Shown: in pieces, positions 9,898-32,954 of the stretch
How the letters are laid out: each line of letters begins with the position of its first letter
Numbering within the stretch: position 1 is the first letter of the stretch
From: Macrostomum lignano
Lineage: Eukaryota
Direction: 5' to 3'
Length of the DNA: 33,718 nucleotides
Assembly: GCA_002269645.1 (NCBI GenBank)
Contig: NIVC01003817.1
Location: 1 to 33,718 of the forward strand
Notes under the pieces: model-generated
The model's database searches: none
Told to the model about the DNA's origin: nothing
Seen by the model: the letters and a program-made list of their open reading frames with translations, nothing else
Made by a program: the position numbers and the translations under genes

Positions 9898-10670
9898 GCA
9901 TCATGTCCTGAACATAATGTCCTGAGCATCATGTCCTGAGCATCATGTCCTGAACATAACCTCTTCTGAGCATCATGTCCTGAACATCATGTCTCCTGAA
10001 CATCATGTCCTGAACATCATGTCCTGAGCATCATGTCCTGAGCATCATGTCCTGAGCATCATGTCCTGAACATAACCTCTTCTGAGCATCATGTCCTGAA
10101 CATCATGTCCTGAACATCATGTCCTGAGCATCATGTCCTGAGCATCATGTCTCCTGAACATCATGTCCTGAACATCATGTCCTGAACATCATGTCCTGAG
10201 CATCATGTCCTGAACATCATGTCCTGAACATCATGTCCTGAACATCATGTCCTGAGCATCATGTCCTGAACATCATGTCTCCTGAACATCATGTCCTGAA
10301 CATCATGTCCTGAGCATCATGTCCTGAACATCATGTCCTGAACATCATGTCCTGAACATCATGTCTCCTGAACATCATGTCCTGTACATCATGTCCTGAA
10401 CATCATGTCTCCTGAACATCATGTCCTGAACATCATGTCTCCTGAACATCATGTCCTGAGCATCATGTCCTGAACATCATCTTGTCTGAATATTACATCC
10501 TGAGGAATTTAATCATGTCCTGAACATAATTTTCAGAATATCATGTCCTGAACATTATTTCCAAAATATCATGTCCTTAACATTATGTCCTGAGCATCAT
10601 GTACTGAGCATCATCTCTCCTAAACATAAGTCCTGAACATAATCTCTCCTGAACGTCATGTCTTGGACCA
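9881..10670. repeat. 14-bp minisatellite (TGAACATCATGTCC) starting inside the last codons of CDC45
   Basis: More than 50 copies, decaying toward 10670. The first unit is TGAACATCATGTCG at 9881-9894, immediately before the stop. Confidence 0.95.
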
Positions 10671-11249
10671 CCATGCCCCTATTGATGCAATTTAAGGTTA
10701 GCGAATGACTTCAGCAATTTATTCTGTTTGGATTTTCGGTCGCGCATTTTCCTCATAAAAATCGCATGTCGCTCGCTTGTAGAAATTACGGTATTAATTG
10801 CGCTAACTTAATTCGGTCTCAGAGTACTTTTATTAAACTTGATCCGTCGCATTTTATGGCTGCTACTCTCAGTAGCGCTGACGGAGTCTCCCAGTCTGGA
10901 AGCCAATAATTTCGCGCATTTCGATTGCTTTACAATGGAAAATATTTTTATCAAATTTTCGCTCACAAGTTTGCTCAGCTTGCTTAATTGAAGTTGTCCC
11001 CCTGCTGCTCTTGTGGGCTTTTCTGGGGGATCCGTGCTGAGCATCAGAATGGGTAAATAAATATCGTGTGTAATAATAGCCAGCCCAGGCCTTCCTTTCA
11101 GTTGCTTTTATTTTCCTAAAATGTCTCATGACTCTGCTTTCGTTTTTATTCGTTTTTTCATCATCAGCCTCCACTTCTTACAGGACACACCGTTGCTGGC
11201 TGCCGCAACACCCTCACGTCTCCACCCACTGCGCTTTTCACTTCTCCAC

Positions 11250-12032
11250 ATCCCCCACAGCCCTCACATCTCCCACAGCCCTCACATCTCCCACAGCCCT
11301 CACATCCCCCACAGCCCTCACATCCCCCACATCCCTCACATCCCCCACATCCCCCACAGCCCTCACATACCCCACATCTCCCACAGCCCTCACATCCCCC
11401 ACATCCCCACAGCCCTCACATCCCCCACATCCCCCACAGCCCTCACATCCCCCACATCTCCCACAGCCCTCACATCCCCCACATCCCCCACAGCCCTCAC
11501 ATCCCCACATCCCCCACAGCCCTCACATCCCCCACAGCCCTCACATCCCCCACATCTCCCACAGCCCTCACATCCCCCACATCCCCACAGCCCTCACATC
11601 CCCACAGCCCTCACATCCCCCACAGCCCTCACATCCCCCACATCCCCCACAGCCCCTCACATCCCCCACAGCCCTCACATCCCTCGCATCCCCCACAGCC
11701 CTCACATCCCCCACAGCCCCCACATCCCCCACAGCCCCTCACATCCCCCACAGCCCCTCACATCCACTACAGCCCCCACAGCCCCTCACATCCCCCACAG
11801 CCCCTCACATCCCCCACAGCGCCTCACATCCCCCACAGCCCCTCACATCCCCCACATCCCCCACATCCCCCACAGCGCCTCACATCCCCCACATCCCCCA
11901 CATCCCCCACAGCGCCTCACATCCCCCACATCCCCCACATCCCCCACAGCTCCCCCACATCCCCCTCACATCCCCCACAGCCCCCACATCCCCCACAGCT
12001 CCCCCACATCCCCCTCACATCCCCCACATCCC
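11250..12032. repeat. C-rich mosaic minisatellite of CCCCACAT / CCCCACAG / CCCTCACAT units
   Basis: Short 9-10 bp related units in irregular order; it explains the His/Pro/Thr-rich ORFs at 11121-12078. Confidence 0.93.
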
Positions 12033-12335
12033 CGCTAAAATACGAGGCACTCTAAAATTAGAGCCACTCGAAATATAGATTTCAACAAGAGCTTTGTCTA
12101 ATTAGTTCACAATTGAATCCTCGCGCTGCAGCCCGGAACACTTGAAGTGAATTTGTTATGTACATAAAAATGCGCAACACGAGGGCATAACAGCGAGGCA
12201 AAAACCTGATTTGTTGAAGGTGGCTGTTTCGCAGGTTTGAGCAGACTGCTTTAAACATAGGAAGATAAGCTTGCACCGCATTATGCTAAAATTTACGTCT
12301 ACAGGGCCGCACTTGTATTTTCAACCATCCAGCAT

Positions 12336-13520
12336 TCAGCCGGACGCCTTCAGGCCCGCTGCTGGCAGCGTAGCGAGCCACTCCATGCCCAGCAGCCAGT
12401 CCTGGCCGGAGCTCAGTGCGCCCGCTGAGGTCGCAGACTTCCGTACACCGCGCCACAGCCTGCGGAACAGCCGGGAGAGCTGCCGGTGCAGGGGTGGGTT
12501 TGTGCTTGATGATAGTTTTATTTTAATAAAATAAGAAATATAAAAATTTTGAAAGTTTTGAAATATTGCAATACTTCGATGCATATGCGCATTTATGACC
12601 TAGCTCATATTTTGGATCGGGGTCCAGCTGGGTTGGATTGGGTTCCAGCTGGGTTGGATCGGGTCCAGCTGGGTTGGATCGGAGTCCAGCTGGGTTGAAT
12701 TGGGTCCAGCTGGGTTGGATTGGGTCCAGCTGGATTGGATTGGGTCCAGCTGGGTTGGATCGGAGTCCAGCTGGGTTGGATTGGGTCCAGCTGGGTTGGA
12801 TTTGGTCCAGCTGGGTTGGATCGGAGTCCAGCTGGGTTGGATTGGGTCCAGCTGGGTTGGATTGGGTCCAGCTGGGTTGGATTTAGTCCAGCTGGGTTGG
12901 ATTGGGTCCAGCTGGGTTGGATTTAGTCCAGCTGGGTTGGATTGGGTCCAGCTGGGTTGGATTTAGTCCAGCTGGGTTGGATTGGGTCCAGCTGGGTTGG
13001 ATTTAGTCCAGCTGGGTTGGATTGGGTCCAGCTGGGTTGGATTTAGTCCAGCTGGGTTGGATTGGGTCCAGCTGGGTTGGATTTAGTCCAGCTGGGTTGG
13101 ATTGGGTCCAGCTGGGTTGGATTCAGTACAGCTGGGTTGGATCGGAGTCCAGCTGGGTTGGATCGGAGTCCAGCTAGGGGGGGATATAACTGGGAATGAA
13201 ATTTCGCACCTTTCTCTTAGCAGTCCTGGCCAGCTTCCGAGCCGACCGTCCCTTGCCGGTCCTGAAAGTCGCGGTCGCCACGTCCGTCGCTTCCTCCTGA
13301 ACCAGCGGCTCCGCAGCTGCAGCTTCGCCCTCAGCTGGGCAGTCGGCCGATGCATCATCGGCGTTCGCGTCCTGCGCTGCACTGAAGCTGCCAGAAAGGA
13401 GGCCTTCTGTCTCGGCGAAGCCGGCCTCTTCTACGTCGTCACGAAGGCGACGCCAACGACGGTGACATTTCCAGGAAGTTGACGGCATGCTTGCGGCTGG
13501 CTTGCTCTTTCCCTGAGTTG
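12336..13520 (-). CDS. Possible last two exons of an unknown (orphan) gene
   Basis: A GC-rich acidic exon at about 13520-13210 ends AAG|GTGCGA. It joins in phase 0 to 12479-12336 after CCGGCAG, giving ..RKLARTAKRK|LSRLFRRLWRGVRK..ASG*. The intron carries a minisatellite, as in neighbouring genes. No start exon or recognisable domain was found. Confidence 0.3.
12612..13175. repeat. 20-bp minisatellite (GGGTCCAGCTGGGTTGGATT)
   Basis: About 28 tandem copies. Confidence 0.95.
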
Positions 13521-14949: not shown

Positions 14950-16983
14950 ATGGAAGATGTGAGTTCCTGTTTGTGGGCCTTCCGAGAATTAAGAAAAAAT
15001 CAGCATTAGCTGAGGCGCTCTCAAAAACGCTGTAAAGGACATTTCGCACTCACATGTAGTTCGTATAACCTCAGGCGGATGTGTTGCCTCACTTCAAAGT
15101 CCCCGAACGAACCTGAAACAGTAATAGGCAGAATATTGTAAGGCGTTATGTAAAAAGCCGCACAAATACAAATGAACTATTTTTAGAACAAAGTCCACGC
15201 CACGCCAGCTTCAGAAGAGAGTAAGAGCACTGGAGCACTGCTGACGCAGGTCCTGGCCGCGGCTGCCAGCGAGACCACAGCCCACGGGCTCAGCAGGCTG
15301 GCGGGCCAGAGGCCGCTCTACATCAAGCTCTGCTGGCTGCTGGCCTTCCTGGCCCTGCTCGCTGTGTTCACCTTCAGCATGCACGGCTTCACAAGCAAGC
15401 TCGTCAGAGGCGAGGTCAGCACTTCCTACGAGGCCGAGGCTGTGGACTTCCAGTTTCCCGACGTGTACTTCTGCAACAATGTCCAGGTGTCGGGCACCTA
15501 CTCCGTCACGCTCGCCAGCGAGTTCGTCACCGACATCAACGCCAGGGTGACCGCCTCGCTCGCCACCTTCGACTCGGCGCTGCAACGGCTGCTCAACTCG
15601 TCGCTCGCGAACGCCACCGAGTCTCAAATCGAGCAGATGAAGCTGTACAGACTGAAGTCCGCCATCCAGTCAATGCCGTACAGCTTGCTGGTGGACCATC
15701 TCGCTCACAAGGAGCAGCAGACGGTACTGAAGAACGACAGCAAGTCGGGCGTCTCCCTCAGACCCTTCTATCACTCGAATCACCTCAAGTGTCTCAAGGT
15801 CGAGCTGACCGAGCAGAGACTCGCTGAGCTGAGCAAGGTCAACTCGGAGATCAGCTTCCAGTTCATTCTGGATCCGTACTTCACCGACTTTTATAGCGTA
15901 TTGAATGTCAGCGCGTATTCACAGGTAATGAGCGTGACGGTCCCGCTGTACAACAACCTGAGTACATTCGTGTACGACTGGGACCTGGACTCGCCCTACG
16001 AGATCGACAGGCCGATGGGAATGAGGCTGTACCTGGCTCCTCGAGGCGAGTACCCGAGCAGGTTCGTGACCAACTTCCTGCTCGCTCCCGGCAGGTCCTA
16101 CAGCATCGGGCTCAGCATGCAGAGCATCAAGAAGGAGCCCGAGGCGTACGGCGGACGCTGCCTGACGGAGGCTCCCGACGTGCAGTTCGTCAATCCGTAC
16201 GACGGCTCGGCGTACGCGTTCGGCTACAGCAACAGCTTCTGCTACTTCTCAGAGTTCGCTCGGCAGCTGTCTGTGAACGGCGGCTGCAGTCCGTACGTGA
16301 ACCCGCTGCCGTGGCAGTTCAGGCACCTGCGCTTCTGCCTGAATGCGAGCGGCCTGAACGAGTCTCAGATCGAGTCGAACCTCCTGCAGGCGTTCACAGC
16401 TGACACGGCCGCGCTGAGCGACTTCCAGCAGCTGTGCCAGAGCAGGCAGCTGTGCGTGTCACGGAAGTACGAGACCAGCACCTCCAGCGCGAACTGGCCC
16501 AACGAGAACGGGCAGATCCGGCTTGTCACGGGCATCATGAAGACTATTCTGGACAAATCTCCAAGCACATATCGGCCTGCCTGGAGGGCGATACTTCACT
16601 CCGTGAGGCAGCACTTTTCTGCGGAAGATGAGGAGGAGAATATTTCTGACGCAGAAGCTCTGGCCAACAAGTTCTTCTCCCGCTCGGGCCTGGAGGTGAC
16701 GCTGCGCAGCCAGCAGTCGCGCAGCTCGCAGATCCGGCTGTCGCCCGGCTACTCTCTGCAGACGTTCATCGCCGACATTGGCGGCACTGCGGGCATCTAC
16801 CTCGGCTGCAGCCTGCTGAGCCTGTGCGAGCTCGTCGAGCTGCTGTACAACCTGATCAAAGTGCTGAAGAGGCGCCCGAATGCAAACGCAGTACACGCGA
16901 TGCCTAAAATGCAAAATGGCAGCTCTGCTCATTTAGATGAAGGAAAACTCGATGAAATGAGCTCAGAGCAACAGCGGGTTTGA
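14950..16983 (+). CDS. DEG/ENaC (amiloride-sensitive channel / ASIC-like) subunit, about 601 aa
   Basis: Large exon 15187-16983 plus a predicted 9-nt first exon 14950-14958 (ATG GAA GAT|GTGAGT ... TTTTAG, phase 0; this exon is less certain). Features: ETTAHG motif, TM1 (LCWLLAFLALLAVF), FPDVYFCN, Cys-rich thumb domain, and TM2 FIADIGGTAGIYLGCSLLSLCELVE with a G-x-S filter. Confidence 0.93.
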
Positions 16984-18133: not shown

Positions 18134-18590
18134 ATGACGACCACCGCTGAAAAGCTGCGAGCTGTCGGAATGGCTGAAGCTGCATGACACGCACTTCTTG
18201 CCGGCTGCGCGCTGAAGACGATCCGGCAGCTGCTGGCCAAATGGCAACGCACCAGCTCGGTTGACCATGGCAACTCTGGCCGACTGCGAGAGCTGACGAC
18301 TTCTTTGGCTTGTCCGCGCGAACCGGACATTGCCAGCCAGCCACGATGCTGCGCCTGCTATGGCGCGAGAGTTCATCACGCCAGCTGCTCAGTGCCCAGA
18401 CAGTCCAGCGCAGAATCCGGGAGACAGCGTTCCGTTCCCGGAAGATGAGGAAGCGGCTGCGACTGTCACCTGCGCAGTGAAGGCGAGTGGTTTTCAGCGA
18501 CGAGGGTCACTTTCGTCTTTTCCACAGCGACGGCCAAGTGCATGTGTGGCGGGAGCCTGGACAGGAGCTTCTCCCAGAGTGCGTGTGTGG
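18134..18590 (+). mobile_element. Tc1/mariner transposase pseudogene (N-terminal HTH to first catalytic Asp)
   Basis: Pieced translation: MTTTAEKLRAVGMAEAA*..GCALKTIRQLLAKWQRTSSVD..SGRLRELT / LSAQTVQRRIRE..RSRK..LSPAQ*RRVVFSDEGHFRLFHSDGQVHVWREPGQELLPECV. These match Tc1 HTH and VxFSDE..F.L..DG..VWR motifs. It has stops, frameshifts and a deletion. A possible left end is TA|CAGTG at 17884; no right TIR was seen. Confidence 0.88.
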
Positions 18591-19025
18591 CGGGAGCCTG
18601 GACAGGAGCTTCTCTCAGAGTGCGTGTGTGGCGGGAGCCTGGACAGGAGCTTCTCCCAGAGTGCGTGTGTGGCGGGAGCCTGGACAGGAGCTTCTCCCAG
18701 AGTGCGTGTGTGGCGGGAGCCTGGACAGGAGCTTCTCTCAGAGTGCGTGTGTGGCGGGAGCCTGGACAGGAGCTTCTCCAGAGTGCGTGTGTGGCGGGAG
18801 CCTGGACAGGAGCTTCTCTCAGAGTGCGTGTGTGGCGGGAGCCTGGACAGGAGCTTCTCCCAGAGTGCGTGTGTGGCGGGAGCCTGGACAGGAGCTTCTC
18901 CCAGAGTGCGTGTGTGGCGGGAGCCTGGACAGGAGCTTCTCCCAGAGTGCGTGTGTGGCGGGAGCCTGGACAGGAGCTTCTCTCAGAGTGCGTGTGTGGC
19001 GGGAGCCTGGACAGGAGCTTCTCCC
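18536..19025. repeat. 41-bp minisatellite amplified from Tc1 transposase coding sequence
   Basis: Unit CGTGTGTGGCGGGAGCCTGGACAGGAGCTTCTCCCAGAGTG, about 12 copies. The first copy is the in-frame VWREPGQELLPEC segment. Confidence 0.93.
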
Positions 19026-19400
19026 GGCACTCACACTTCCCCGGGGATAAACACTCCGGCACTCACACTTCCCCGGGGATAAACACTCCGGCACTCACAC
19101 TTCCCCGGGGAAAAACACTCCGGCACTCACACTTCCCCGGGGATAAACACTCCGGCACTCACACTTCCCCGGGGATAAACACTCCGGCACTCACACTTCC
19201 CCGGGGATAAACACTCCGGCACTCACACTTCCCCGGGGATAAACACTCCGACACTCACACTTCCCCGGGGATAAACACTCCGGCAATCACACTTCCCGGG
19301 GATAAACACTCCGGCACTCACACTTCCCCGGGGATAAACACTCCGGCACTCACACTTCCCCGGGGATAAACACTCCGACAATCACAATTTGCTTGGGATA
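19024..19400. repeat. 32-bp minisatellite (CCGGCACTCACACTTCCCCGGGGATAAACACT)
   Basis: About 11 head-to-tail copies with no spacers, directly abutting the 41-bp array. Confidence 0.93.
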
Positions 19401-19954
19401 AACATCCCGATATTTGAGGCAAATAAAAATCTTTTTAATATGGTCTTGGCATGTTTTTTATTTCTGTTGTCTGATAGCTTTGCAAGAGATATGAAACCGT
19501 TGTGTGAAATTTCTAATATTTCGGAGCATCTCGATCAGACAGTGAATTTTAAAAAAATTATACATAGGATATTTGCCCCAGTTTTCTGCTTGGCTTTCTT
19601 TCCTGAGTGGTTTGAATTTCAAAGTGGATCCTCACCGCCTGCAAGTCGCAGACACTGGTGCCAGTGTTTGCCCCAGTGCCTGGCGTGGCTGGGAAAGCCC
19701 TGGAGGGAGCTGCTGCTTTCCACAGGACACTTGCAGCTGCTTGAGAGAATAAAGCTCTGGGCATGGAGCTGTGTCAATAGAGTTGGCTCGGATGCACTCA
19801 TCATCACCCACTCAATGCAGCTCGGCAGTCCAAGTCACTCGCTATTGAAGAATCAGCCATTTTAGTTACAGGCCCCACGGAGAGAACGACGGTTTTCGGC
19901 AACTGGAGAATATGATTCGGAGACTCGTGGATTGGGAGATGTATAGGTTTATTG

Positions 19955-20908
19955 ACGTCACCAGTTAGATCACTGGTTCATTCACCGTCACCAGTTAAAT
20001 CACTGGTTCATTCACCGTCACCAATTAAATCACTGGTTCATTCACCGTCACCAGTTAAATCACTGGTTCATTCACCGTCACCAGTTAAATCACTGGTTCA
20101 TTCACCGTCACCAATTAAATCACTGGTTCATTCACCATCACCAGTTAAATCACTGGTTCATTCACCGTCACCAATTAAATCACTGGTTCATTCACGTCAC
20201 CAGTTAGATCACTGGTTCATTCACCGTCACCAGTTAAATCACTGGTTCATTCACCGTCACCAATTAAATCACTGGTTCATTCACGTCACCAGTTAGATCA
20301 CTGGTTCATTCACCGTCACCAGTTAAATCACTGGTTCATTCACGTCACCAGTTAAATCACTGGTTCATTCACCGTCACCAGTTAAATCACTGGTTCATTC
20401 ACGTCACCAGTTAGATCACTGGTTCATTCACCGTCACCAGTTAAATCACTGGTTCATTCACGTCACCAGTTAGATCACTGATTCATTCACCGTCACCAGT
20501 TAAATCACTGGTTCATTCACCGTCACCAGTTAAATCACTGGTTCATTCACCGTCACCAGTTAGACCATTGGTTCATTCACGTCACCAGTTAGATCACTGG
20601 TTCATTCACCGTCACCAGTTAAATCACTGGTTCATTCACCGTCACCAGTTAAATCACTGGTTCATTCACCGTCACCAGTTAAATCACTGGTTCATTCACC
20701 GTCACCAGTTAAATCACTGGTTCATTCACCGTCACCAGTTAAATCACTGGTTCATTCACCGTCACCAGTTAAATCACTGGTTCATTCACCGTCACCAGTT
20801 AAATCACTGGTTCATTCACCGTCACCAGTTAAATCACTGGTTCATTCACCGTCACCAGTTAAACCATTGGTTCATTCACGTCACCAGTTAGATCCCTGGT
20901 TCATTCAC
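19955..20908. repeat. 30-bp minisatellite (TCACCGTCACCAGTTAAATCACTGGTTCAT)
   Basis: About 31 copies, some 29 bp; each has an internal inverted repeat CCAGT-N6-ACTGG. Confidence 0.95.
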
Positions 20909-21507
20909 ACGAACGCTAAGCTGGAATATCAAAGAACTGAGCACACGAAAGAGATAAAATTCAAACTTAAAGTTTGATAAGAGCGTGGCGCAGTGCAACA
21001 GAAGCACTTGACAACCCATGTATTTACTGCAATAGCAATCTGCAGGAATGCCAGGGGTGCACTCCTATTCGCTCAGGGAAGCCAAAGCTGTCTTTGCTTA
21101 CTGTATAGTTATTCTAATCTAATACATCAGTGTAATAAGATACTTAAATAATAATCACAGCCAATAAATTTTAGTGCAAAAATATAGAATATAAAAACCA
21201 TAAACTGAGATAAATTTTGCCGCTCTGCACACACAAATGGCGCAAAACGGCTATTTGAAAATAGATTATAATAGCATCGCATTAAAGCTACTTACAGTAA
21301 TATTGATAGTACCATGTAAAAACGCCAAAAATTACGGATTTCTGTTTTAATGAAGCTAGTAAAAAGCTCTTGCACTACTTTCGGCGGCAGTCAAATCAAG
21401 CAAAAACTGTTGCTGATTGAAAGAGCTGCGGCAGCTTAAATTGGCTCCATGACCTGCAATGCGGAATGGATTAAGCAATAATCCTGCACTCAGTCTGTCC
21501 CTGCCAG

Positions 21508-24500
21508 TTACTCAGCCACTCTCACCTGCTTCCAAGGCTTTGGTTCGTTTGGATCCCGCAGGTAGGCACCAGCAGCGAGCTCTGACAGCGAGACCAGCAC
21601 CGCGGGAGTGGTGACCAGGCTCTCCGGCAGCCTGCAGGCGATGGGGCGCGATTTAGGGCGAGAACTGTGTGAGACTGACATGAGAACTGTGTGAGACTGA
21701 CATGAGAACTGTGTGAGACTGACATGAGAACTGCGTGAGACTGACATGAGAACTGTGTGAGACTGACATGAGAACTGCGTGAGACTGACATGAGAACTGC
21801 GTGAGACTGACATGAGAACTGTGTGAGACTGACATGAGAACTCATGCCTTACCCAAGCAGCCGCTCAACGATGGCCCGGGCGCAGCAGACAGCAAAGACG
21901 GACTCGGCGTGGGTGAGCTTGTAGAACTGCTGGCGCGAGGCCGGCCCGAGACAGGCGGACAGCTCCTTCTGCTGGCCGTTGTACATGAAGGCCAGCGTCT
22001 GAGGGGATTCGGGAATTGCTAATAGCGCTGAAGGCCTGGCAGCCCCGCCGCAGGCAGCCCGCGACTCACCTTGACATCCTCCATGCTGGCATTCACGGGC
22101 AGCAGGCTCAAGAATGCCGGGTGCCGCGGCAGCGGGTTCAGGCAGAACAGCAGCACCGGGGCCGACCGGCTCCGCCTACGGCACAGCGCCAGGTACAACA
22201 GGCTGGTGAGCCGGGCGGACGTCAGGAACACCGGCGACAGAAACAGCGCCACCACGCTGGCCTGATCGAGTGAGAGGGTTGAAGGCTTGCAGGCTCACCT
22301 GCCACCTCACCTGCTTCATTAATCTCAGTCTCACCTGCTGCATCACTCCCAGTCTCACCTGCTGCATCACTCCCAGTCTCACCTGCTGCATCACTCCCAG
22401 TCTCACCTGCTGCATCACTCCCAGTCTGTCTCACTTGCTGCATCACTCCCAGTCTGTCTCACTTGCTGCATCACTCCCAGTCTCACTTGCTGCATCACTC
22501 CCAGTCTCACCTGCCTCGTCACTCCCAGTCTGTCTCACTTGCTGCATCACTCCCAGTCTCACCTGCTGCATCACTCCCAGTCTCACCTGCCTCATCACTC
22601 CCAGTCTGTCTCACTTGCTGCATCACTCCCAGTCTCACCTGCTGCATCACTCCCAGTCTCACCTGCCTTATCACTCCCAGTCTGTCTCACTTGCTGCATC
22701 ACTTCCAGTCTCACCTGCTGCATCACTCCCAGTCTCACCTGCTGCATCACTCCCAGTCCTACCTGCTCCATCGCCTCCATATCGTCATGCGCCTGTTCGG
22801 AGTCCAGACAGCGCACCTGCAGGTCGGTCGCGAATTCCTTGGCTTGAAGTCGGACGGCCTCAACCAGCGGCTCGCGCTCATCGGGGTGGCAGACCAGGGC
22901 CGCGTGGCAGATGTCCACAACTGGCAGGGGCCTCTCAGCAGCTGCAGCCGCCGCGGCCTTCACGAAAGCGCCCAGGCTGGCTGAGCTGAGCAGCGGCGGT
23001 TTTGCATTCAGCAGCGACTGGCGCAGCTTGTCGGTCTGGGACATCAGGGTGGAGAGTTCCTGGCGGCGGGTGCGGGAGACACTGGTGCATCGCCCGACAC
23101 TCGGAGACAGTTTTCAAAACATATGACCGAATTCGGAGAAAATTTACAATGCATCAAGTAATTTTGACGCGACACTTCCAAGAACGATCACGTGACATTC
23201 TGAAACAGATCACGTGACACTCTGAAACAGATCACGTGACAATCTGAAACAGATCACGTGACAATCTGAAACAGATCACGTGACAATCTGAAACAGATCA
23301 TGTGACACTCTGAAACAGATCGCGTGACACTCTGAAACAGATCATGTGACACTCTGAAGCAGATCACGTGACACTCTGAAACAGATCATGTGACACTCTG
23401 AAACAGATCACGTGACAATCTGAAACAGATCATGTGACACTCTGAAACAGATCGCGTGACACTCTGAAACAGATCACGTGACACTCTGAAACGGATCGCG
23501 TAACTTTCTGAAACAGAAACTCACGTGGCAATCCGGAAACAGCTGTTCTCTGAGATGCGCCGCCTTCTTGTCCCCGGACTTGGCCGTCAGCACCTTAGCA
23601 ACGGAGACGGCCACCCGCTTGACGCACTGCTCCCTGGAGCCGGTGGCGTCCAGCCAGCGGGCCACGGACTGCAGCGCAGGAGGGCAGGCGGGCCCCAGGC
23701 GCTCCAGGCAGACGGGCAGCAGCAGGGCTTGGTGCCGGTCGCAGCGGTGCAGCATGGAGGCGATTGTGAACTCCTCCAGACAGACGGCCGACTTGGCGTA
23801 GTCCGGCGTCAAGAAGGCGACGATGAGACGGCTGCCGCTAATGGCAGAGTAGATGGTCTCCATCCAGGAGTAGCCCGTCTGGATGCCCTGCTTGTCAAAG
23901 AAGATACGCAGCGCGGGGCAGGCGAGCCGCAGGTGGGTGAGGAACGGCTCCACGGCGGCCGAGTTGCGGTGGCAGTAGGAGATGAAGATGTCGTAGCCGC
24001 TGCCGCCGCCGGCCACCGCGGCCGGTCCCAGAGCCGGCTCGGCCTGCTTGGAGACACCTGTTGGATGCGGTTAAAACACGCAAACTCAAACTGGGCCGCT
24101 TCACTCACCCACCTGGCCGCTTCACTCACCCACCTGGCCGCTTCACTCACCCACCTGGCCGCTTCACTCACCCACCTGGCCGCTTCACTCACCCACCTGG
24201 CCGCTTCACTCACCCACCTGGCCGCTTCACTCACCCACCTGGCCGCTTCACTCACCCACCTGGCCGCTTCACTCACCCACCTGGCCGCTTCACTCACCCA
24301 CCTGGCCACTTCACTCACCCACCTGGCCACTTCACTCACCCACCTGGCCACTTCACTTACCCAACGCAAGCTGCTCCAGCCTGCCGCCGATCTCCCCGAT
24401 GGCGGCCTGCAGTTTGTCGCAGCCGGGCTGGTCTGTCGGTTTGGGCCGGCAGTCAATCCACTGGATGAGCGACATGTACGTAGGCGGGCTCGCCAGCCGC

Positions 24501-26977
24501 TCCAGGCAGACGGGCAGGAAGGGATGCCACCGCGTGTGCGCCAGGCACATCGCCACGTTGAAATCCTCGACGCAGGCCCGGGTGGCCAGGAAGGCCTGCG
24601 ACAGCAGACAGACCACCAGACGGCTGCCCAGCATGTCGGAGCGCCGGGCGTCGATTGCTGACGTCGCAGCCGCCGCTTTGCTGCCTTCAGCAGCCTCATC
24701 GCCCGACGAGCTGCTGCTGCTGTCGTCACTGTGCACCACCTTGCGGCAGCGCAGGCTTTTCTGGTTGGCCTTCAGACTGCGGGTGGTCCGCTCCAGGAAC
24801 TGCAGGTCCTTCTCGCTGCAGACCACTAGCAGGTCCGCCTCAATGGGGACCGGCTGAGGGTTGGGGCAATTGGACAAGGACTTCTGGATCTTTTATCTGG
24901 AGTGGAAACTGGCCATTTTCATGCACCATAAGACTGGCTGGCTGGCTGTAGGCTAGGGAGATCGGGAAGGCAGTTCTAGAGCTTCGGTAAAGATAGTAAG
25001 AAATAAATTCTCTCAGATGTAAATTAGGAAGGGTTCCAGTCCACTCCAGCTTGCTCTGCCTAGAACTCCTCGACCCAAACACTGACGGTTCCACAGTCCA
25101 CTCCAGCCTGCTCTACCTAGAACTCCTTGACCCAAACACTGACGGTTCCACAGTCCACTCCAGCTTGCTCTACCTAGAACTCCTTGACCCAAACACTGAC
25201 GGTTCCACAGTCCACTCCAGCTTGCTCTGCCTAGAACTCCTTGACCCAAACACTGACGGTTCCACAGTCCACTCCAGCTTGCTCTACCTAGAACTCCTTG
25301 ACCCAAACACTGACGGTTCCACAGTCCACTCCAGCTTGCTCTGCCTAGAACTCCTTGACCCAAACACTGACGGTTCCACAGTCCACTCCAGCTTGCTCTG
25401 CCTAGAACTCCTCAACCCAAACACTGACGTCCGGTGCTCACGTCCGGCTTTCTGTGCCGACTCTCGAAGGCGTGCTTGAGCCGCTGGAACTCTTGGACGG
25501 CCCGCCTGTCGTCCTCGGCGAGGCTCTCCACGGCCAGCTTGGAGGTGTAGATGACCAGAGTGTAGCGCCGCATGGGCAGGCCGATGCTGATCCACGTGTG
25601 CCAGGCCGTTACCAGCGCGTGCATGATGCGCGACTTGGAGGCCCGCTGGCAGCCCGTGGCCAGCAGCGGGCTGATGACGCTCATGTTGTCGGCGAACACC
25701 GTGAACATGGCACGGAAGATCTCGCCTACCGCCTTCTCGGGACTGCGCTCTCTGTTGGCCACCACCTGCTGCTCGAAGCAGAGCAGCCGCCTGTTGGTGG
25801 TGAGTGGGAGCCAGTCAGTCAGTGTGACAGCAGCCAGTCAGTGTGACAGCAGCCAGTCAGTGTGACAGCAGCCGGTCAGTGTCTGAAAGCAGCCAGTCAG
25901 TGTGACAGCAGCCAGTCAGTGTGACAGCAGCCAGTCAGTGTGACAGCAGCCGGTCAGTGTCTGAAAGCAGCCAGTCAGTGTGACAGCAGCCAGTCAGTGT
26001 AACAGAAGCCAGTCAGTGTCTGACAGCCAGTCAGTCTGACGCAAAGTGCTCTTATTCGCAAGCGCAGGTCTGCCTTACTTGTACGGCAGATCAGAAGGCA
26101 GCGGCTTGGAGATCCAGCAGTTGAAGTTTTTCCGCAAGTCCTCGGCCTTTTCCCTGGCCAGGTCCCGCACGCTCAGGTTGAACTGGCGCTTCAGGGCGCC
26201 GATAACGGTTGACGGGACTGCTGAGTAGTCGGCTGAAGCGAGGGTCGCGTGAGCTTCAGATCATAGGAATTTAATTAACGGTAGAACAACAAACTGGAGC
26301 AGCCCCGTGACAGCTCAAAATCAATCTCAAAAAATTGTCATGCAAAGATTTTTTCGACCAGTTCAAACTAATCGGCACATATTGCAACACTTGCAAGCAG
26401 AGTTAATCTATTGTAGCTATGCTAGCAGGCTTGGGCACTGCCGCAGATCACGGCGGCAGCAGACCTGCAACACATGAAATCGAGCCCAAGGTGTTTTGGT
26501 GTGATGAGCCAGATGCGTTACCGCTGAGCCACTTTGCGTGCTGAGCCACTCTGCGTGCTGAGCCACTCTGCGTGCTGAGCCACTCTGCGTGCTGAGCCAC
26601 TCTGCGTGCGGAGCCACTCTGCGTGCTGAGCCACTCTGCGTGCGGAGCCACTCTGCGTGCTGAGCCACTCTGCGTGCGGAGCCACTCTGCGTGCTGAGCC
26701 ACTCTGCGTGCTGAGCCACTCTGCGTGCTGAGCCACTCTGCCCCTACTGTGCTGAGCTACTCTGCCCCTACTGTGCTTCCTTATACTTTAACACTGCTAG
26801 CCTGATCTCAATTCACAACCCATAAGTTTGCTCACCAGAGAAGGCCGAGATCATGATGACATCATAAGGCTCCCCACCAGGCTCAATCTTGGTGATGTCT
26901 CCCAGACAAAGCTGCATCTCAGCCTGCTGGACTCTGCTGGGCGAGTCCACCTGAATTTGGGACACCTGACGCAGCAT
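21508..26977 (-). CDS. Macro-like domain + three TIR domains protein, at least 9 exons, about 804-809 aa
   Basis: Exons (minus): 26977-26836, 26232-26079, 25790-25442, 24853-24361, 24057-23525, 23059-22763 (acceptor less certain), 22261-22070, 21998-21853, 21631-21526. The last exon is followed by a GT donor or reads through VRVAE* to 21508. All junctions are GT-AG with matching phases 1,2,0,1,0,0,0,2, and there are no internal stops. Macro-like: LCLGDIT..DVIMISAF..SPLLATG. TIR2: YDIFISYCH..IFFDKQGIQTG..SRLIVAFLTPDYAKSAVCLEEF. TIR1 and TIR3 are degenerate copies. Confidence 0.88.
21661..21843. repeat. 22-bp minisatellite (GAGAACTGTGTGAGACTGACAT), intron 8 of Macro-TIR gene
   Basis: About 8 copies. 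Confidence 0.93.
22305..22765. repeat. 24/28-bp minisatellite (TCACTCCCAGTCTCACCTGCTGCA), intron 6 of Macro-TIR gene
   Basis: About 17 copies; on the gene strand each unit contains CAG|GTGAGA or a close variant. Confidence 0.93.
23188..23525. repeat. 22-bp minisatellite (CACGTGACACTCTGAAACAGAT), intron 5 of Macro-TIR gene
   Basis: About 15 copies; CACGTG with CATGTG and CGCGTG variants. Confidence 0.93.
24090..24360. repeat. 21-bp minisatellite (CTGGCCGCTTCACTCACCCAC), intron 4 of Macro-TIR gene
   Basis: About 13 copies. Confidence 0.95.
25036..25430. repeat. 57-bp minisatellite, intron 3 of Macro-TIR gene
   Basis: 7 copies; the period matches the 19-aa repeat in ORF 25051..25479. Confidence 0.95.
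25810..26040. repeat. 19-bp minisatellite (AGTGTGACAGCAGCCAGTC), intron 2 of Macro-TIR gene
   Basis: About 12 copies. Confidence 0.92.
26523..26775. repeat. 17-bp minisatellite (CTGAGCCACTCTGCGTG), intron 1 of Macro-TIR gene
   Basis: About 13-14 copies. Confidence 0.93.
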
Positions 26978-29687: not shown

Positions 29688-32600
29688 ATGGATAATAATA
29701 CCGATGGCGCGTATGGTGCTGGAAAAGCACAAGGTTTCGGCTTCGCGTTCGATCCACTTGAATTTATAAAGCGACCTACAACTATCCTTCGTCTTGTCTC
29801 TTGGGTAAGCTGCTACAAAATATGTATGTATGATATGATACGCCTACGGCCATATAGGTGTGCAGTAGATATAAAACTGAAGGCATTGTTTCCTGTTCCA
29901 GTATACCGAAGTGCCTAATATATTTTTCCTAAAATTTCCTAAACTGGTACTGTTGCACATTAGAGGGAAACAAATTAGCTAAAGTTATGCATTAAAATAT
30001 GTTCAATAGGTTTAGCATTCAATATTTAGGCAATCTTCAAGGTTCGTTCGTTAAATTACTTCCCATCAGAGTCTAGTTAAACATTAATAAACTTTCTATT
30101 TACTTATTTCACATGCTGGCTTGAACAGCTGTTTTACTATTGGGTAGTGTTGGGCACCAGTCCGTTAATAAGTGTTAATCCATTAATAAGCATTAATAAG
30201 TGTTAAGATTTTTAATTAACATTAACAGACTGTCGTTAAGATTTTTTTGAACTAATGGATTAACAAATTTGCATTAAAAATTTGTGAATTAACGATAAAT
30301 TCATCATTAATGGTAGTGTCTATGTCAATGACCAAAGATACAAAGAAGGAATGAAAAATAGAAGTCTTACAAGAAGTTTAAACATTACAAACGTATTTGA
30401 GCTTACCTATATGCCTAAATATAATCTCTTTTTTATGATGATGATCATACAGATGTACAAGTAATTAAAACTTCTTACGAATAAACTTTAAAATAATGAA
30501 TTAAAATAGTGTGAAACTTTATTTCTTGTGCGTGAGCATTGATTGCTTTGATTCACTTCTGTCCCAATCTTTCGCAACTTTCTGCTGCGCCTGCTAATGG
30601 TACTGAAACAACCTTCCTATGCATATTTAATTATGAATTTCTCATTATTAGCTTTTAAGTTTCAAATAAAATAAGTTACTTTTTTACCATATGCTTTACT
30701 TTTAGTAGTATTATGCATGCAAGTTTTTAAAATGATTATTTATTACTTTTTTAGCTTTCAAATCGCTTCAATGACTTCTGTGTTTCGCTAAAAAGATGGA
30801 ATAGCAAAGACGTGCATTATGAAGTCTGTTTTGGAAAAAATGTGCAAGATTTCCATATTTTCTGTGTTAACTTGAACGGATTAATGCTTATTAACAATTA
30901 TCAGTTAACTTTCAGTTAACTTAACGAAATTAGGAGTTAAAAAGTTAAGATTTTTTTGTTTTAACGCTAACGCTTTTGCTATTAACGGAAGTTAAGATTT
31001 TCATTAACGGTGCCAACACTGCTATTGGGTCAATCCTAGTATATAATCATTTATTGATTGTCACTAGGGGCCTAATAGTAATGCAGTCAACTATAACAAT
31101 CATAAATTATAATAAAATGGTAGTACAGAAACACTTGAAGTCTATGAAAGAGATTTCTAGATTCATTTGAATGTAAGAAATTATTTGATCTTCAATCATC
31201 ATCTGGCTTGCAGTTTTTTGCTGTGATTGTATTTGGCTGCATCAGCAGTGGAGGCTATGTAGAAGATGTTTGCATCATGAAAGGCGACAAGAATGCTTGC
31301 GGCTTTGGCATCTTTGTTGGCGTGTTCGCCTTCATTGCCTGCATCCTGTTTCTGCTGGGTGATGTGCTGTTCGAGAAGCTGTCCTCCGTGCAGCATCGCA
31401 AGTTTCTTGTCATTGGCGATCTCGGCTTTTCTGGTGAGTTACAGGGTGAATCTGGGATGGGTGTGAATGCCAGCATGCAGGGTGAATCTGGGATGGGTGT
31501 GAATGCCAGCATGCAGGGTGAATCTGGGATGGGTGTGAATGCCAGCATGCAGGGTGAATCTGGGATGAGTGTGAATGCCAGCATGCAGGGTGAATCTGGG
31601 ATGGGTGTGAATGCCAGCATGCAGGGTGAATCTGGGATGGTGTGAATGCCAGCATGCAGGGTGAATCTGGGATGAGTGTGAATGCCAGCATGCAGGGTGA
31701 ATCTGGGATGGGTGTGAATGCCAGCATGCAGGGTGAATCTGGGATGGGTGTGAATGCCAGCATGCAGGGTGAATCTGGGATGAGTGTGAATGCCAGCATG
31801 CAGGGTGAATCTGGGATGGGTGTGAATGCCAGCATGCAGGGTGAATCTGGGATGGGTGTGAATGCCAGCATGCAGGGTGAATCTGGGATGAGTGTGAATG
31901 AAAGTGTAGTCGCCTTCGGTACTCTTGTCAGATTGCCTGGCTACTGCCAGACCTATGGCCGTTAGAAAATGGGTTCCGTTTGATAGAAAAGCCTACTTAA
32001 AGTAGTATAAACACTGAAATACTCTAAGTATTACCGCACCCGAGCCGAGCAGTTCAGGCACACAAAGTACACAAAGAGGTCCTGAATTTCCCGCAAATTT
32101 ACCGCGGGAGTTGGGTCAGCAGCTGCTACGAGAACATCAATTTAAAATTTCGTTGAAAACTTTTCGCTTGTTTTGCTGTCTGCATGCCAAGCTTTTCAAT
32201 GACATAAAAATACTTTTCATTGCCTGGCGCCTTCAACTCCCGCAGCTGCCTGGGCCTTCTTTTATTTCGTGGCCTTCTGCTACCTCACCAACAAGTGGAC
32301 CACCACCTCCGAGGAGTTCATCCTCATCAACGACGTGAAGCCGTGGCAGGCCTCCAACGTGCGCGCCAGCATCGCCTTCTCCTTCTTCTCCATCGCCAGC
32401 TTCGGCGCGCTGGCCTTCTTTGCTTTTCAGAAATTCCGCATGGGCGCGCAGGGCGCCTTCCAGACTTCCGACCAGGTGGAGCGGATCGGTGCACTGATGA
32501 ATGGGGCGTGCCAGTCCGGGTCTGGGGCTGGCTGGGGTGCCAGTCCGGGTTTAGGCATGGTTGGGGTGCCAGTCCGGGTTTATGGCATGGTTGGGGTGCC

Positions 32601-32954
32601 ACTCCGTGTTTAGGGCATGGTTGGGGTGCCAGTCCGGGTTTATGGCATGGTTGGGGTGCCAGTCCGGGTTTATGGCATGGTTGGGGTGCCACTCCGTGTT
32701 TAGGACATGGTTGGGGTGCCAGTCTCGCCGAGAATTTCACGAACCCTACCACCGCCTCATCCCATCTGTACCCAGATCGAGAGCCAGATCGCCGGCGCAG
32801 ATGGTAGCGGCGGAGTCGGCGGCGGAGTCGGCGGCGGAGTCGGTGGTGGAGTCGGCGGAGCCCGGGTGGTGGCTTCCAGCAGCCTCCGTTCGGCGCCGGA
32901 GGCGGTGGGGGAGACTTCGGCGGCGGCCAGCAGTTCCAGCCGCCCGCCTACTGA
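29688..32954 (+). CDS. SYNGR: Synaptogyrin (MARVEL tetraspan vesicle protein), 4 exons, about 248 aa; apparent 1-nt deletion at CCC 32861-32863
   Basis: Exons 29688-29804, 31214-31433, 32246-32475 and 32776-32954. Signature GAYGAGKA..FDPLEFIKRPTTILRLVSW|FFAVIVFGCI..C..ACGFGIFVGVFAF..DLGFS..FCYLTNKW..RASIAFSFFS. The C-terminus FQPPAY* is reached after adding one base. Confidence 0.93.
30145..31021. mobile_element. Non-autonomous hAT-type element (877 bp) in synaptogyrin intron 1
   Basis: Left end TAGTGTTGGGCACCAGTCCGTTAAT; right end reverse-complements to CAGTGTTGGCACCGTTAAT. Perfect 8-bp TSD CTATTGGG (30137-30144 and 31022-31029). Dense subterminal TTAAC/GTTAA motifs. Confidence 0.88.
31440..31900. 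repeat. 36-bp minisatellite (CAGGGTGAATCTGGGATGGGTGTGAATGCCAGCATG), synaptogyrin intron 2
   Basis: About 13 copies starting about 8 nt after the donor. Confidence 0.95.
32505..32725. repeat. 30-bp minisatellite (GGCATGGTTGGGGTGCCAGTCCGGGTTTAT), synaptogyrin intron 3
   Basis: About 7 copies. Confidence 0.9.

What the first reader, a model, noticed from the sequence alone, without database searches (positions are those of the whole stretch)
21508..26977. Intron-rich animal gene fusing a macro-like domain to three TIR domains: a one-protein Thoeris-like NAD+ signalling module?
Seen: nine phase-consistent exons encode about 805 aa in the order Macro-like (about aa 1-215), TIR1, TIR2, TIR3, short tail. 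I see no signal peptide, TM, LRR, SAM, ARM or death domain. The ORF track shows only disconnected pieces. Established: TIR domains of SARM1, plant NLRs and bacterial ThsB cleave NAD+ using a conserved Glu to make ADPR-derived signals. Macro domains bind ADP-ribose, and in type II Thoeris a Macro-containing ThsA senses the TIR product. Inference: this protein couples a writer (TIR2) and a reader (Macro) of an ADPR-type messenger, for feedback or allosteric control in invertebrate innate immunity or cell death. The TIRs look like the bacterial/TIR_2 type rather than TLR/MyD88. Eight introns exclude bacterial contamination. I cannot confirm novelty without a database search.
Basis: partly seen in the sequence, partly recalled or inferred. 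Interest (0 to 1): 0.9.

Follow-up and report, generated by a model that had tools for sequence, protein, structure and literature searches.

The report
Flatworm macro-plus-three-TIR gene, bacterial-type module
This is a real, intron-rich flatworm gene for a protein with a divergent ADP-ribose-type (macro) domain and three TIR domains, one of which keeps the NAD-cleaving residue; it belongs to an unstudied family shared by many marine invertebrates and, as a shorter macro+TIR unit, by bacteria.

Summary
On the minus strand, 26977-21508, nine GT-AG exons give an 809-aa ORF (GC3 0.85). It maps exon by exon onto Macrostomum lignano A0A1I8H2J0, "TIR domain-containing protein".

- **Macro domain:** Pfam sees nothing in the N-terminal 215 aa. 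AlphaFold (pLDDT 90) plus Foldseek, and a family profile against PDB sequences (Af1521 E 2e-4), show a divergent macro domain.
- **TIR domains:** Three follow. Only TIR2 keeps the catalytic Glu (E475). That position is Asp in TIR1 and Leu in TIR3.
- **Not a one-off fusion:** Orthologues with the same architecture, mostly ending in a CaaX prenylation box, occur in echinoderms, hemichordates, a brachiopod, a nemertean and molluscs.
- **Bacterial relatives:** A shorter macro+one-TIR protein is common in bacteria such as Planctomycetota. It stood alone, without a conserved partner gene, in six contexts.

My best reading is a nucleotide-gated TIR NAD+ hydrolase or cyclase: the macro domain senses or regulates, TIR2 is catalytic, and TIR1 and TIR3 are scaffolds. 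All biochemistry is inferred.

The "Thoeris-like writer plus reader" idea is only partly supported, because no Thoeris-specific feature was met. I found no paper describing this family. I rate it a new variant of a known kind.

The parts
26836..26977 (-). Exon 1: start ATG at 26977. Encodes beta1-beta3 of the macro-like domain, including the GDIT motif (D27 codon at 26899-26897).
   Evidence: The N-terminus aligns with the start of the orthologues.
26079..26232 (-). Exon 2: macro-like domain, aa 48-98 (Y50, IGAL helix, D79-L80-R81, C86-W87).
   Evidence: The 3' part of this exon is skipped in UniProt model P0001 but present in paralogue P0002 and in all orthologues.
25442..25790 (-). Exon 3: rest of the macro-like domain, aa 99-215 (C103-F104-E105; loop 2 P140-L-L-A-T-G145-x-Q147).
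24361..24853 (-). Exon 4: TIR1, aa 216-379. The catalytic position is Asp (CVEDF). A Ser/Ala-rich insertion lies at about aa 257-285.
23525..24057 (-). Exon 5: TIR2, aa 380-557. The catalytic Glu E475 codon is at 23773-23771 (CLEEF).
   Evidence: The position is Glu in 49/49 aligned orthologous TIR2 domains.
22763..23059 (-). Exon 6: helical linker and the first part of TIR3.
22070..22261 (-). Exon 7: core of TIR3. The catalytic position is Leu (RLTSLLY).
21853..21998 (-). Exon 8: C-terminal helix of TIR3.
21508..21631 (-). Exon 9: low-confidence tail, with stop TAA at 21510-21508 if read through. An alternative donor lies after 21526.
   Evidence: pLDDT below 50.
21436..21453 (-). Possible exon 10 (VMEPI*), used by the database model A0A1I8H2J0.
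   Evidence: There is no CaaX box in either 3' end.
21660..26777 (.). Intronic minisatellites, one array per intron: 26523-26777, 25812-26040, 25037-25429, 24094-24363, 23186-23517, 22306-22772, 21660-21842.

Best explanation
The gene encodes a cytosolic, nucleotide-regulated TIR enzyme of a conserved invertebrate family.

Shown:
- An 809-aa protein made of a divergent macro domain followed by three TIR-fold units.
- Only TIR2 keeps the Glu that TIR NADases need. That Glu is invariant in TIR2 across the family and nearly invariant in the single TIR of the bacterial macro+TIR relatives.
- The macro-like domain is almost never found without a TIR directly after it.

Inferred:
- The macro-like domain binds an adenine-diphosphate-ribose type ligand. 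It keeps the GD(I/L)T Asp and the P-x-L-x-(T/S)-G-x-Q loop, which align with the adenine-contacting Asp and the diphosphate loop 2 of Af1521 and PARP14 macro domains.
- Ligand binding controls assembly or activity of the TIR part.
- TIR2 cleaves or cyclises NAD+. TIR1 and TIR3 have lost the Glu in this species and act as built-in partner TIRs for the composite TIR-TIR active site.
- The output is either NAD+ depletion or an ADPR-derived signal in immunity or cell death.
- Most orthologues would work at a membrane through a C-terminal CaaX prenyl anchor, which the Macrostomum copy lacks.
For: - Gene model and identity.
- Macro fold: AlphaFold pLDDT 89.9, pTM 0.88. The Foldseek top hits are Af1521, YmdB, macroH2A and PARP9/14/15 macro domains, E 6e-9 to 1e-6, TM about 0.6-0.7. 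The profile against PDB sequences gives Af1521 E 2e-4, PARP14 macro3 5e-4 and MacroD2 0.01, with loop 2 aligned.
- TIR2: TIR_2 E 4e-18. Its second Glu in CLEEF aligns with the second Glu of CLEEL in Roq1, which from my own knowledge is the catalytic E86.
- Catalytic column: TIR2 has Glu in 49/49; bacterial-type single TIRs in 207/212; TIR1 is mostly Gln; TIR3 has Glu in 26/44.
- Obligate coupling of the two domains: mac-tir 204, mac-tir-tir-tir 41 and tir-mac-tir 18 among 300 relatives.
- 1265 cluster representatives match the macro-like profile.
- The bacterial genes stand alone in six contexts, as expected for a self-contained sensor-effector.
- Hurieva et al. 2026 (doi 10.64898/2026.04.20.719644) report that many non-TLR animal TIRs with this Glu make cADPR.
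Against: - There is no biochemical or expression evidence of any kind.
- The canonical macro loop 1 (Gly-rich, with the catalytic Asn) is replaced by SAF-x-x-DY-x-P-x-P, so ADPR binding cannot be assumed.
- Pfam Macro models and PADLOC (which returned no ThsA or other macro-domain model) do not match.
- A conserved Glu does not guarantee activity. The same preprint notes inactive TIRs that carry the Glu.
- The Macrostomum copy looks partly eroded: an insertion in TIR1, a TIR3 barely recognisable alone (E 0.013), and no CaaX box.
- The relative orientation of the domains in the full-length model is of low confidence (pTM 0.53).
Confidence: 0.5

Rival explanations
1. The macro-like domain is itself an enzyme: a hydrolase or transferase acting on ADP-ribosylated targets or on the TIR product. 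The protein would then be a two-step synthase or processing enzyme, or a self-limiting enzyme pair, rather than a sensor-effector.
For: Several polar residues are invariant or nearly so from bacteria to animals (S44, Y50, D79, C103, E105, W87, Q147). That pattern is typical of a catalytic site. Many macro domains are hydrolases; the Foldseek hits include YmdB, Af1521 and MacroD. Iyer et al. 2022 (PMC9503650) predict that macro domains in TIR systems act on cADPR-like products.
Against: The MacroD-type catalytic loop 1 (Asn and Gly-Gly-Gly) is missing. No sequence model of a known macro hydrolase family matches above threshold.
Confidence: 0.2
2. It is a non-enzymatic adaptor. The TIR units only mediate TIR-TIR scaffolding in a Toll/IL-1-like pathway, and the macro-like domain docks onto ADP-ribosylated proteins or is purely structural.
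For: Two of the three TIRs lack the Glu in this species. Multi-TIR adaptors are the classical view of invertebrate 'TIR-DC' proteins (PMC6321704). CaaX anchoring in orthologues would suit a membrane-proximal adaptor.
Against: The Glu of TIR2 is invariant in 49/49 orthologues and in 98% of aligned bacterial relatives, where no Toll pathway exists. TIR2 is closest to enzymatic TIRs (Cat1, plant TNLs, SAVED-TIR).
Confidence: 0.17
3. This Macrostomum copy is a decaying paralogue with little or no function. The genome carries several near-copies.
For: - There are at least two further related M. lignano entries: P0002 at 88% identity, and P0003, which looks frameshifted.
- TIR1 carries a low-complexity insertion.
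- TIR3 is degenerate.
- The CaaX box is lost.
Against: - The reading frame is intact over nine exons.
- All splice sites are canonical.
- GC3 is 0.85.
- Every family-invariant macro residue and the TIR2 motifs are retained.
Confidence: 0.08

Closest known systems
Bacterial stand-alone macro-like+TIR proteins of about 340 aa (e.g. in Thalassoroseus pseudoceratinae, Candidatus Uabimicrobium amorphum, a Chloroflexota MAG), annotated only as 'TIR domain-containing protein'
   Same: - They have the same divergent macro-like domain, with E about 1e-40 to 1e-50 to the animal profile.
- A TIR with the same C-terminal LPxYM...Q..DCR motif and the catalytic Glu follows it directly.
   Different: - They have one TIR instead of three, no introns and no CaaX box.
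- Some are fused to Hsp70, protein kinase, CHAT-STAND or T6SS sheath (VipA/VipB) modules.
- They are themselves uncharacterised.
Type II Thoeris (ThsB TIR plus ThsA Macro-TM effector)
   Same: It pairs a TIR that makes an ADPR-derived signal with a macro domain that binds it (as summarised in doi 10.64898/2025.12.03.692087). The same two folds are present here.
   Different: - Here the two domains are fused in one chain.
- There is no TM pore part.
- PADLOC returned no ThsA or other macro-domain model for the macro-like domain, and ThsB models match the TIR only weakly.
- The bacterial relatives are not in two-gene operons.
SARM1, and the bacterial TIR-STING, TIR-SAVED and Cat1 (CARF-TIR) effectors
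   Same: The logic matches: a nucleotide-binding regulatory domain joined to a Glu-dependent TIR NADase that works as an oligomer. Cat1 is the best PDB sequence hit of TIR2, and SAVED-TIR is among the best PADLOC hits.
   Different: The sensor fold is macro rather than ARM, STING, SAVED or CARF. There is no SAM oligomerisation domain. There are three tandem TIRs, of which one is canonical.
Canonical macro domains (Af1521, MacroD/YmdB, macroH2A, PARP9/14/15 macro)
   Same: The fold matches, as do the GDIT-type Asp and the Gly-containing loop 2 before the long helix.
   Different: - Loop 1 (Gly-rich, Asn) is replaced by SAF..DY.P.P.
- There is an extra beta-hairpin with D-L-R and C-W.
- There is an invariant C-F-E strand.
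- No Pfam model matches.

Membership tests
Macro domain superfamily | Three-layer alpha/beta/alpha macro fold | tested here: met
   AlphaFold model pLDDT 89.9. The Foldseek top 50 PDB hits are macro domains or macro-carrier fusions, apart from one Af1521-derived designed protein. E is down to 6e-9, probability 1.0, TM 0.55-0.76.
Macro domain superfamily | Significant sequence-profile similarity to known macro domains | tested here: met
   A 22-sequence profile against PDB sequences gives Af1521 E 2e-4, PARP14 macro3 4.6e-4 and MacroD2 0.0097. The top 19 hits are all macro domains. Pfam Macro models themselves give no hit.
Macro domain superfamily | ADP-ribose pocket motifs: Asp after beta2 (GDIT), Gly-rich loop 1 with Asn, Gly loop 2 | tested here: inconclusive
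   The GD(I/L)T Asp (D27) is at least 90% conserved. Loop 2, P-L-L-A-T-G-x-Q, aligns with S-A-G-I-Y-G of Af1521. Loop 1 is absent and replaced by SAF-x-x-DY.
Macro domain superfamily | Binding or hydrolysis of ADP-ribose derivatives | not testable with these tools
   This needs ITC, thermal shift or enzymology.
Enzymatic (NADase/cyclase) TIR domains | TIR fold or profile match | tested here: met
   - TIR2: TIR_2 E 4e-18.
- TIR1: 2.6e-6, at the cut-off.
- TIR3: 0.023 alone, but its family profile against the TIR2 profile gives 98.4% probability, E 4e-15.
- AlphaFold predicts beta/alpha units at 221-378, 403-537 and 610-768.
Enzymatic (NADase/cyclase) TIR domains | Catalytic Glu in helix alphaC | tested here: met
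   Met for TIR2 only. E475 aligns with the second Glu of CLEEL in Roq1, which from my own knowledge is the catalytic E86, and is Glu in 49/49 orthologues. TIR1 has Asp and TIR3 has Leu at that column.
Enzymatic (NADase/cyclase) TIR domains | Glu-dependent NAD+ cleavage | not testable with these tools
   This needs recombinant protein with an E475A control and LC-MS.
Thoeris type II | Separate thsB (TIR) and thsA (Macro + TM) genes in one operon; ThsA-type macro domain | tested here: not met
   Here there is a single fused chain without a TM segment. PADLOC returned no ThsA or other macro-domain model, even at E up to 10. ThsB models reach only E 2e-4 on TIR2. The bacterial relatives are solitary genes.
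SARM1 family | ARM-SAM-SAM-TIR architecture | tested here: not met
   Pfam gave no ARM or SAM hits, and the N-terminus is a macro fold.
TLR / MyD88-type TIR adaptors | PF01582-type TIR with LRR/TM or death domain | tested here: not met
   TIR_2 scores higher than TIR on every unit. There are no LRR, TM or death domains.
Invertebrate macro+3xTIR(+CaaX) family (unnamed) | Collinear macro-like, TIR1, TIR2, TIR3 over at least 85% of length | tested here: met
   The window protein shows 27-34% identity to proteins of Antedon, Asterias, Diadema, Lytechinus, Mercenaria, Crassostrea, Pecten, Physella and Dreissena, at 83-88% coverage for most of them, with E 1e-60 to 1e-84.
Invertebrate macro+3xTIR(+CaaX) family (unnamed) | C-terminal CaaX box | tested here: not met
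   Most full-length orthologues end in C-x-x-(L/M/I/Q). The Macrostomum protein ends ...VRVAE or ...VMEPI.

The most novel reading that the evidence does not exclude
Macro+TIR is an ancient, self-contained immune module inherited or acquired from bacteria and kept in ambulacrarian and spiralian animals. A dedicated, TIR-specific clade of macro domain would sense an ADPR-type messenger, self-made (feed-forward) or pathogen-made, and gate a TIR NADase or cyclase. That would be a fused, one-protein counterpart of Thoeris-type signalling working in animal cells, at membranes in most species.
Probability: 0.25. Interest if true: 0.8.

Novelty: new variant of a known kind. Interest (0 to 1): 0.62.

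Why it matters
TIR enzymes and their nucleotide signals are a current link between bacterial anti-phage defence and plant and animal immunity. In animals, SARM1 was long the only enzymatic TIR known, joined recently by Raw and by preprint reports for TLR4 and other animal TIRs.

This locus points to a whole family, spread over at least five invertebrate phyla plus hundreds of bacterial clusters. In it a previously unannotated macro domain is tied to a catalytic-type TIR. If the macro domain is the ligand sensor, the family offers a simple one-protein system for asking three questions:
- what ADPR-type molecules animals use as immune signals;
- how tandem TIRs build an active site;
- whether such modules were inherited from bacteria.

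Macrostomum lignano is genetically tractable (RNAi, transgenesis), so the function can be tested directly.

There is also a practical gain. The UniProt model of this gene omits 39 residues of the macro core, and Pfam misses the domain altogether.

Tried and rejected
- **Pfam, NCBIfam and PADLOC on the N-terminal domain.** No useful hit. This is why structure prediction and custom profiles were needed.
- **First profile.** The 11 animal sequences against PDB sequences gave only macro domains, but below threshold (E 0.1). Adding bacterial members made the hits significant.
- **The search for related loci.** The run on the bacterial alignment failed because no stretch was conserved enough. I used the look-up of encoding contigs instead.
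- **Conserved operon partner.** Six bacterial contexts showed none. An ADP-ribosylglycohydrolase gene near one and a NUDIX gene near another are probably coincidence.
- **Recent horizontal transfer into the flatworm, or bacterial contamination.** I rejected this because:
  - the gene has introns and animal neighbour genes;
  - the animal macro domains form one clade whose branching roughly follows animal phylogeny.

  The bootstrap for that clade is weak, 32/60 on a simple NJ tree.
- **TM or secretion.** Rejected by the hydropathy scan. No dedicated predictor was run.
- **Literature.** Searches for ecTIR-DC, Macro-TIR, macro plus TIR plus invertebrate, and tandem or three TIR domains found no description of this family. 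Gerdol et al. 2017, which classified invertebrate 'ecTIR-DC' families, is not held. I cannot exclude that this family has a number there.
Full report
**1. What is in the sequence**

The finding lies on the minus strand. Stop-free segments with high GC3 alternate with tandem-repeat blocks.

Reading the minus strand, I could join nine exons through canonical splice sites with consistent phases:
- 26977-26836
- 26232-26079
- 25790-25442
- 24853-24361
- 24057-23525
- 23059-22763
- 22261-22070
- 21998-21853
- 21631-21508

Together they give 2430 nt, 809 codons plus stop, and GC3 0.85. The seven longer introns each hold a different minisatellite, with periods of 17 to 57 bases. That is why a bacterial-style ORF list shows only fragments.

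A search of the protein collection returned Macrostomum lignano A0A1I8H2J0, 'TIR domain-containing protein' (E = 0), plus two further M. lignano entries. tblastn places that protein on the same exon blocks, and exon 5 is 100% identical. So the window is this locus of the flatworm M. lignano.

The database model differs from mine in two places:
- It skips 39 residues (RDLAREK...CFEQQV) that contain family-invariant residues. These residues are present in paralogue P0002 and in all orthologues, so my model is the better one there.
- It uses a donor after 21526 and a mini-exon at 21453-21436 (VMEPI*). I cannot decide between the two 3' ends without RNA data.

The neighbours in the window are ordinary animal genes: ASC/ENaC, CDC45, WSC and MARVEL.

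**2. The domains**

*N-terminal domain.* Pfam finds TIR_2 in exon 5 (E 4e-18) and exon 4 (2.6e-6, at the cut-off). It gives only 0.023 in exons 6-8 and nothing in the first 215 residues.

For the N-terminus I aligned eleven family members and predicted the structure. The result was pLDDT 89.9 and pTM 0.88. Foldseek against the PDB gave macro domains: Af1521, YmdB, macroH2A and PARP9/14/15 macro. Its SPX entries are macro-carrier fusions, and one hit is an Af1521-derived designed protein. E values run from 6e-9 to about 1e-6, with probability 1.0.

A sequence profile of the animal members alone hit only macro domains, but weakly (E 0.1). A profile that also holds bacterial members reached Af1521 at E 2e-4, PARP14 macro3 at 4.6e-4 and MacroD2 at 0.01. 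The N-terminus is therefore a divergent macro domain.

Its pocket motifs compare with canonical macro domains as follows:
- It keeps the GD(I/L)T Asp (D27).
- It keeps a loop, P-L-L-A-T-G-x-Q, that aligns with loop 2 (S-A-G-I-Y-G) of Af1521.
- The Gly-rich loop 1 with the catalytic Asn is replaced by SAF-x-x-DY-x-P-x-P.
- There are additional invariant residues: D79, C86, W87, C103, F104, E105 and Q147.

*TIR domains.* The family-level profile of the third unit matches that of TIR2 at 98.4% probability (E 4e-15). The Macrostomum TIR3 alone is barely recognisable (E 0.013). The full-length AlphaFold model (pLDDT 73) predicts three alternating beta/alpha units at 221-378, 403-537 and 610-768. 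Its Foldseek hits are macro and TIR structures, including RPP1, RUN1, MAL, SNC1 and Roq1.

*Catalytic Glu.* In the phmmer alignment with Roq1, the second Glu of TIR2's CLEEF (E475, codon 23773-23771) aligns with the second Glu of CLEEL in Roq1. From my own knowledge that residue is the catalytic E86. Across the fetched relatives that column reads:

| Domain | Residue at the catalytic column | Macrostomum |
|---|---|---|
| TIR2 | Glu in 49/49 | Glu (E475) |
| Single TIR of bacterial-type relatives | Glu in 207/212 aligned | n/a |
| TIR1 | Gln in 26/52, Glu in 13/52 (at least 11 from one cluster) | Asp |
| TIR3 | Glu in 26/44 | Leu |

**3. The family**

The protein is not a one-off fusion. Proteins with 27-34% identity, most of them covering 83-88% of its length in the same domain order, occur in:
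- crinoids, sea stars, brittle stars, sea urchins and a sea cucumber;
- hemichordates;
- the brachiopod Lingula;
- the nemertean Tubulanus;
- bivalves, gastropods and Octopus.

All are 'uncharacterized' or carry automatic names.

Most full-length orthologues end in a CaaX box (e.g. KSCILL, STCNIL, KSCQIL, SSCVLL), which predicts prenylation. The flatworm copy has none.

A stramenopile clam parasite (Mucochytrium quahogii) has macro plus three TIRs, and a haptophyte (Pavlovales) has macro plus two detected TIRs.

An exhaustive HMMER search with the macro-like profile found 1265 cluster representatives, 757 of them below E 1e-10. Most are proteins of about 340-440 aa in which the macro-like domain is followed directly by one TIR. 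Named examples come from Planctomycetota (Thalassoroseus, Ca. Uabimicrobium) and Chloroflexota.

Some relatives, mostly from metagenomes and unnamed, carry extra modules: Hsp70, protein kinase, CHAT-STAND, or T6SS sheath VipA/VipB.

Among the 300 relatives examined, the architecture counts were mac-tir 204, mac-tir-tir-tir 41 and tir-mac-tir 18. This macro clade is therefore essentially TIR-specific.

In six bacterial contexts the gene stands alone among unrelated genes.

A simple NJ tree of the macro domain puts all animals in one clade, with weak bootstrap (32/60). Ambulacraria separate from spiralians, and Macrostomum sits next to Tubulanus and Lingula. This fits vertical descent within Bilateria, with losses in chordates and ecdysozoans, rather than a recent transfer into the flatworm. 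How the module first reached eukaryotes remains open.

**4. How it most likely works**

Shown:
- the architecture;
- the selective retention of the TIR2 Glu;
- the tight coupling of this macro clade to TIR;
- the stand-alone status of the bacterial genes.

Inferred, by analogy with SARM1, TIR-STING, TIR-SAVED, Cat1 and Thoeris: the macro-like domain binds an adenine-ribose-diphosphate type ligand and controls assembly of the TIRs. TIR2 is the NAD+ glycohydrolase or cyclase. TIR1 and TIR3 provide partner surfaces.

I give this reading a confidence of about 0.5. The rivals are:
- the macro-like domain is itself an enzyme that processes the product or removes ADP-ribosylation (0.2);
- the protein is a pure adaptor (0.17);
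- this copy is decaying (0.08).

Hurieva et al. 2026 (doi 10.64898/2026.04.20.719644) report that many non-TLR animal TIRs with the Glu make cADPR, and also that some Glu-bearing TIRs are inactive. Activity here is therefore plausible but unproven.

**5. Comparison with what is known, and novelty**

- The protein meets the fold and profile criteria of the macro superfamily, but not the canonical loop-1 motif.
- TIR2 meets the sequence criteria of enzymatic TIRs.
- It fails the defining features of Thoeris II (separate genes, a ThsA-type macro with TM), of SARM1 (ARM-SAM), and of TLR/MyD88 adaptors.
- 'Thoeris-like' is therefore a statement about possible logic, not about membership.

I found no paper on a macro-TIR fusion or on this invertebrate family. 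The TIR atlas of Culbertson et al. 2026 (PMC13142454) notes uncharacterised animal TIR clades but does not mention a macro domain. Gerdol et al. 2017 could not be read, so a prior 'ecTIR-DC' label cannot be excluded.

The gene itself is already deposited. What is new is the recognition of the macro domain, its family-wide coupling to TIR from bacteria to animals, the pattern of Glu retention, and the CaaX box.

**6. Verdict**

I rate it a new variant of a known kind, with interest 0.62.

Noticed in passing
Orthologues P0004, P0008-P0016, P0019, P0021, P0026, P0027, P0029, P0034, P0036, P0042 (C-termini); window 21436-21631: Most full-length orthologues end in a CaaX-type box (C-x-x-L/M/I/Q, e.g. 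KSCILL, STCNIL, SSCVLL). This predicts prenylation and membrane anchoring. Neither possible 3' end of the Macrostomum gene has one.
   Followed up: partly
window 21660-26777 (introns), and also 7016-7618, 8894-9412, 9881-10662, 11246-12033, 12620-13175, 18537-19404, 19956-20908, 31442-31900, 32508-32724: Each of the seven longer introns of this gene is largely filled by its own high-identity minisatellite (period 17-57 bases, 81-99% matches). Similar arrays lie across the whole window. It looks like a genome-wide habit of this species; no cause was sought.
   Followed up: no
window 26079-26170 and 25752-25790 (aa 70-108 of my model): UniProt model A0A1I8H2J0 (P0001) skips 39 residues of the macro core, including invariant D79, C86, W87 and C103-E105. 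Paralogue P0002 and all orthologues keep them, so this is probably an annotation error or a minor isoform.
   Followed up: partly
window 15364-16983 (+): A single 539-aa open frame matches the amiloride-sensitive sodium channel family (ASC/DEG/ENaC, Pfam E 1.8e-26). It is an apparently intron-free stretch of a neighbouring gene.
   Followed up: partly
window 8222-9880 (+), 3316-3591 (+), 31208-32613 (+): Exons of a CDC45 homologue (E 3e-18), a WSC-domain exon (E 6e-14) and a MARVEL-domain (synaptogyrin-like) gene (E 1e-7) flank the locus.
   Followed up: partly
P0083, P0110, P0116 (relatives; metagenomic): Large bacterial-type proteins fuse T6SS sheath domains (VipA/VipB), and in P0116 also an apparent N-terminal kinase-like region (from reading the sequence; not scanned), to an extra TIR and a C-terminal macro-like+TIR unit. 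P0046 and P0049 fuse Hsp70, P0048 a protein kinase, and P0077 a CHAT protease plus STAND NTPase to the same unit.
   Followed up: partly
P0119 (Mucochytrium quahogii), P0043 (Pavlovales sp.): A labyrinthulomycete parasite of hard clams carries macro plus three TIRs, and a haptophyte carries macro plus two detected TIRs. In the NJ tree neither groups with the animals, which suggests separate acquisitions.
   Followed up: partly
window 24650-24740 (aa about 257-285, within TIR1): A Ser/Ala-rich low-complexity insertion (DDSSSSSSGDEAAEGSKAAAATSA) interrupts TIR1 of the flatworm protein. It is absent from all orthologues and has pLDDT below 50.
   Followed up: no
L002 8210-9421 (Ca. Uabimicrobium amorphum): A second TIR-domain gene (403 aa) lies directly downstream of the macro+TIR gene in this phagocytic planctomycete, probably a tandem paralogue. 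Whether it has the macro-like domain was not checked.
   Followed up: no
P0037 (Anneissia japonica, 349 aa): A crinoid protein has about 190 extra N-terminal residues in front of the macro-like domain and no detected TIR. It may be a truncated model or a different architecture.
   Followed up: no
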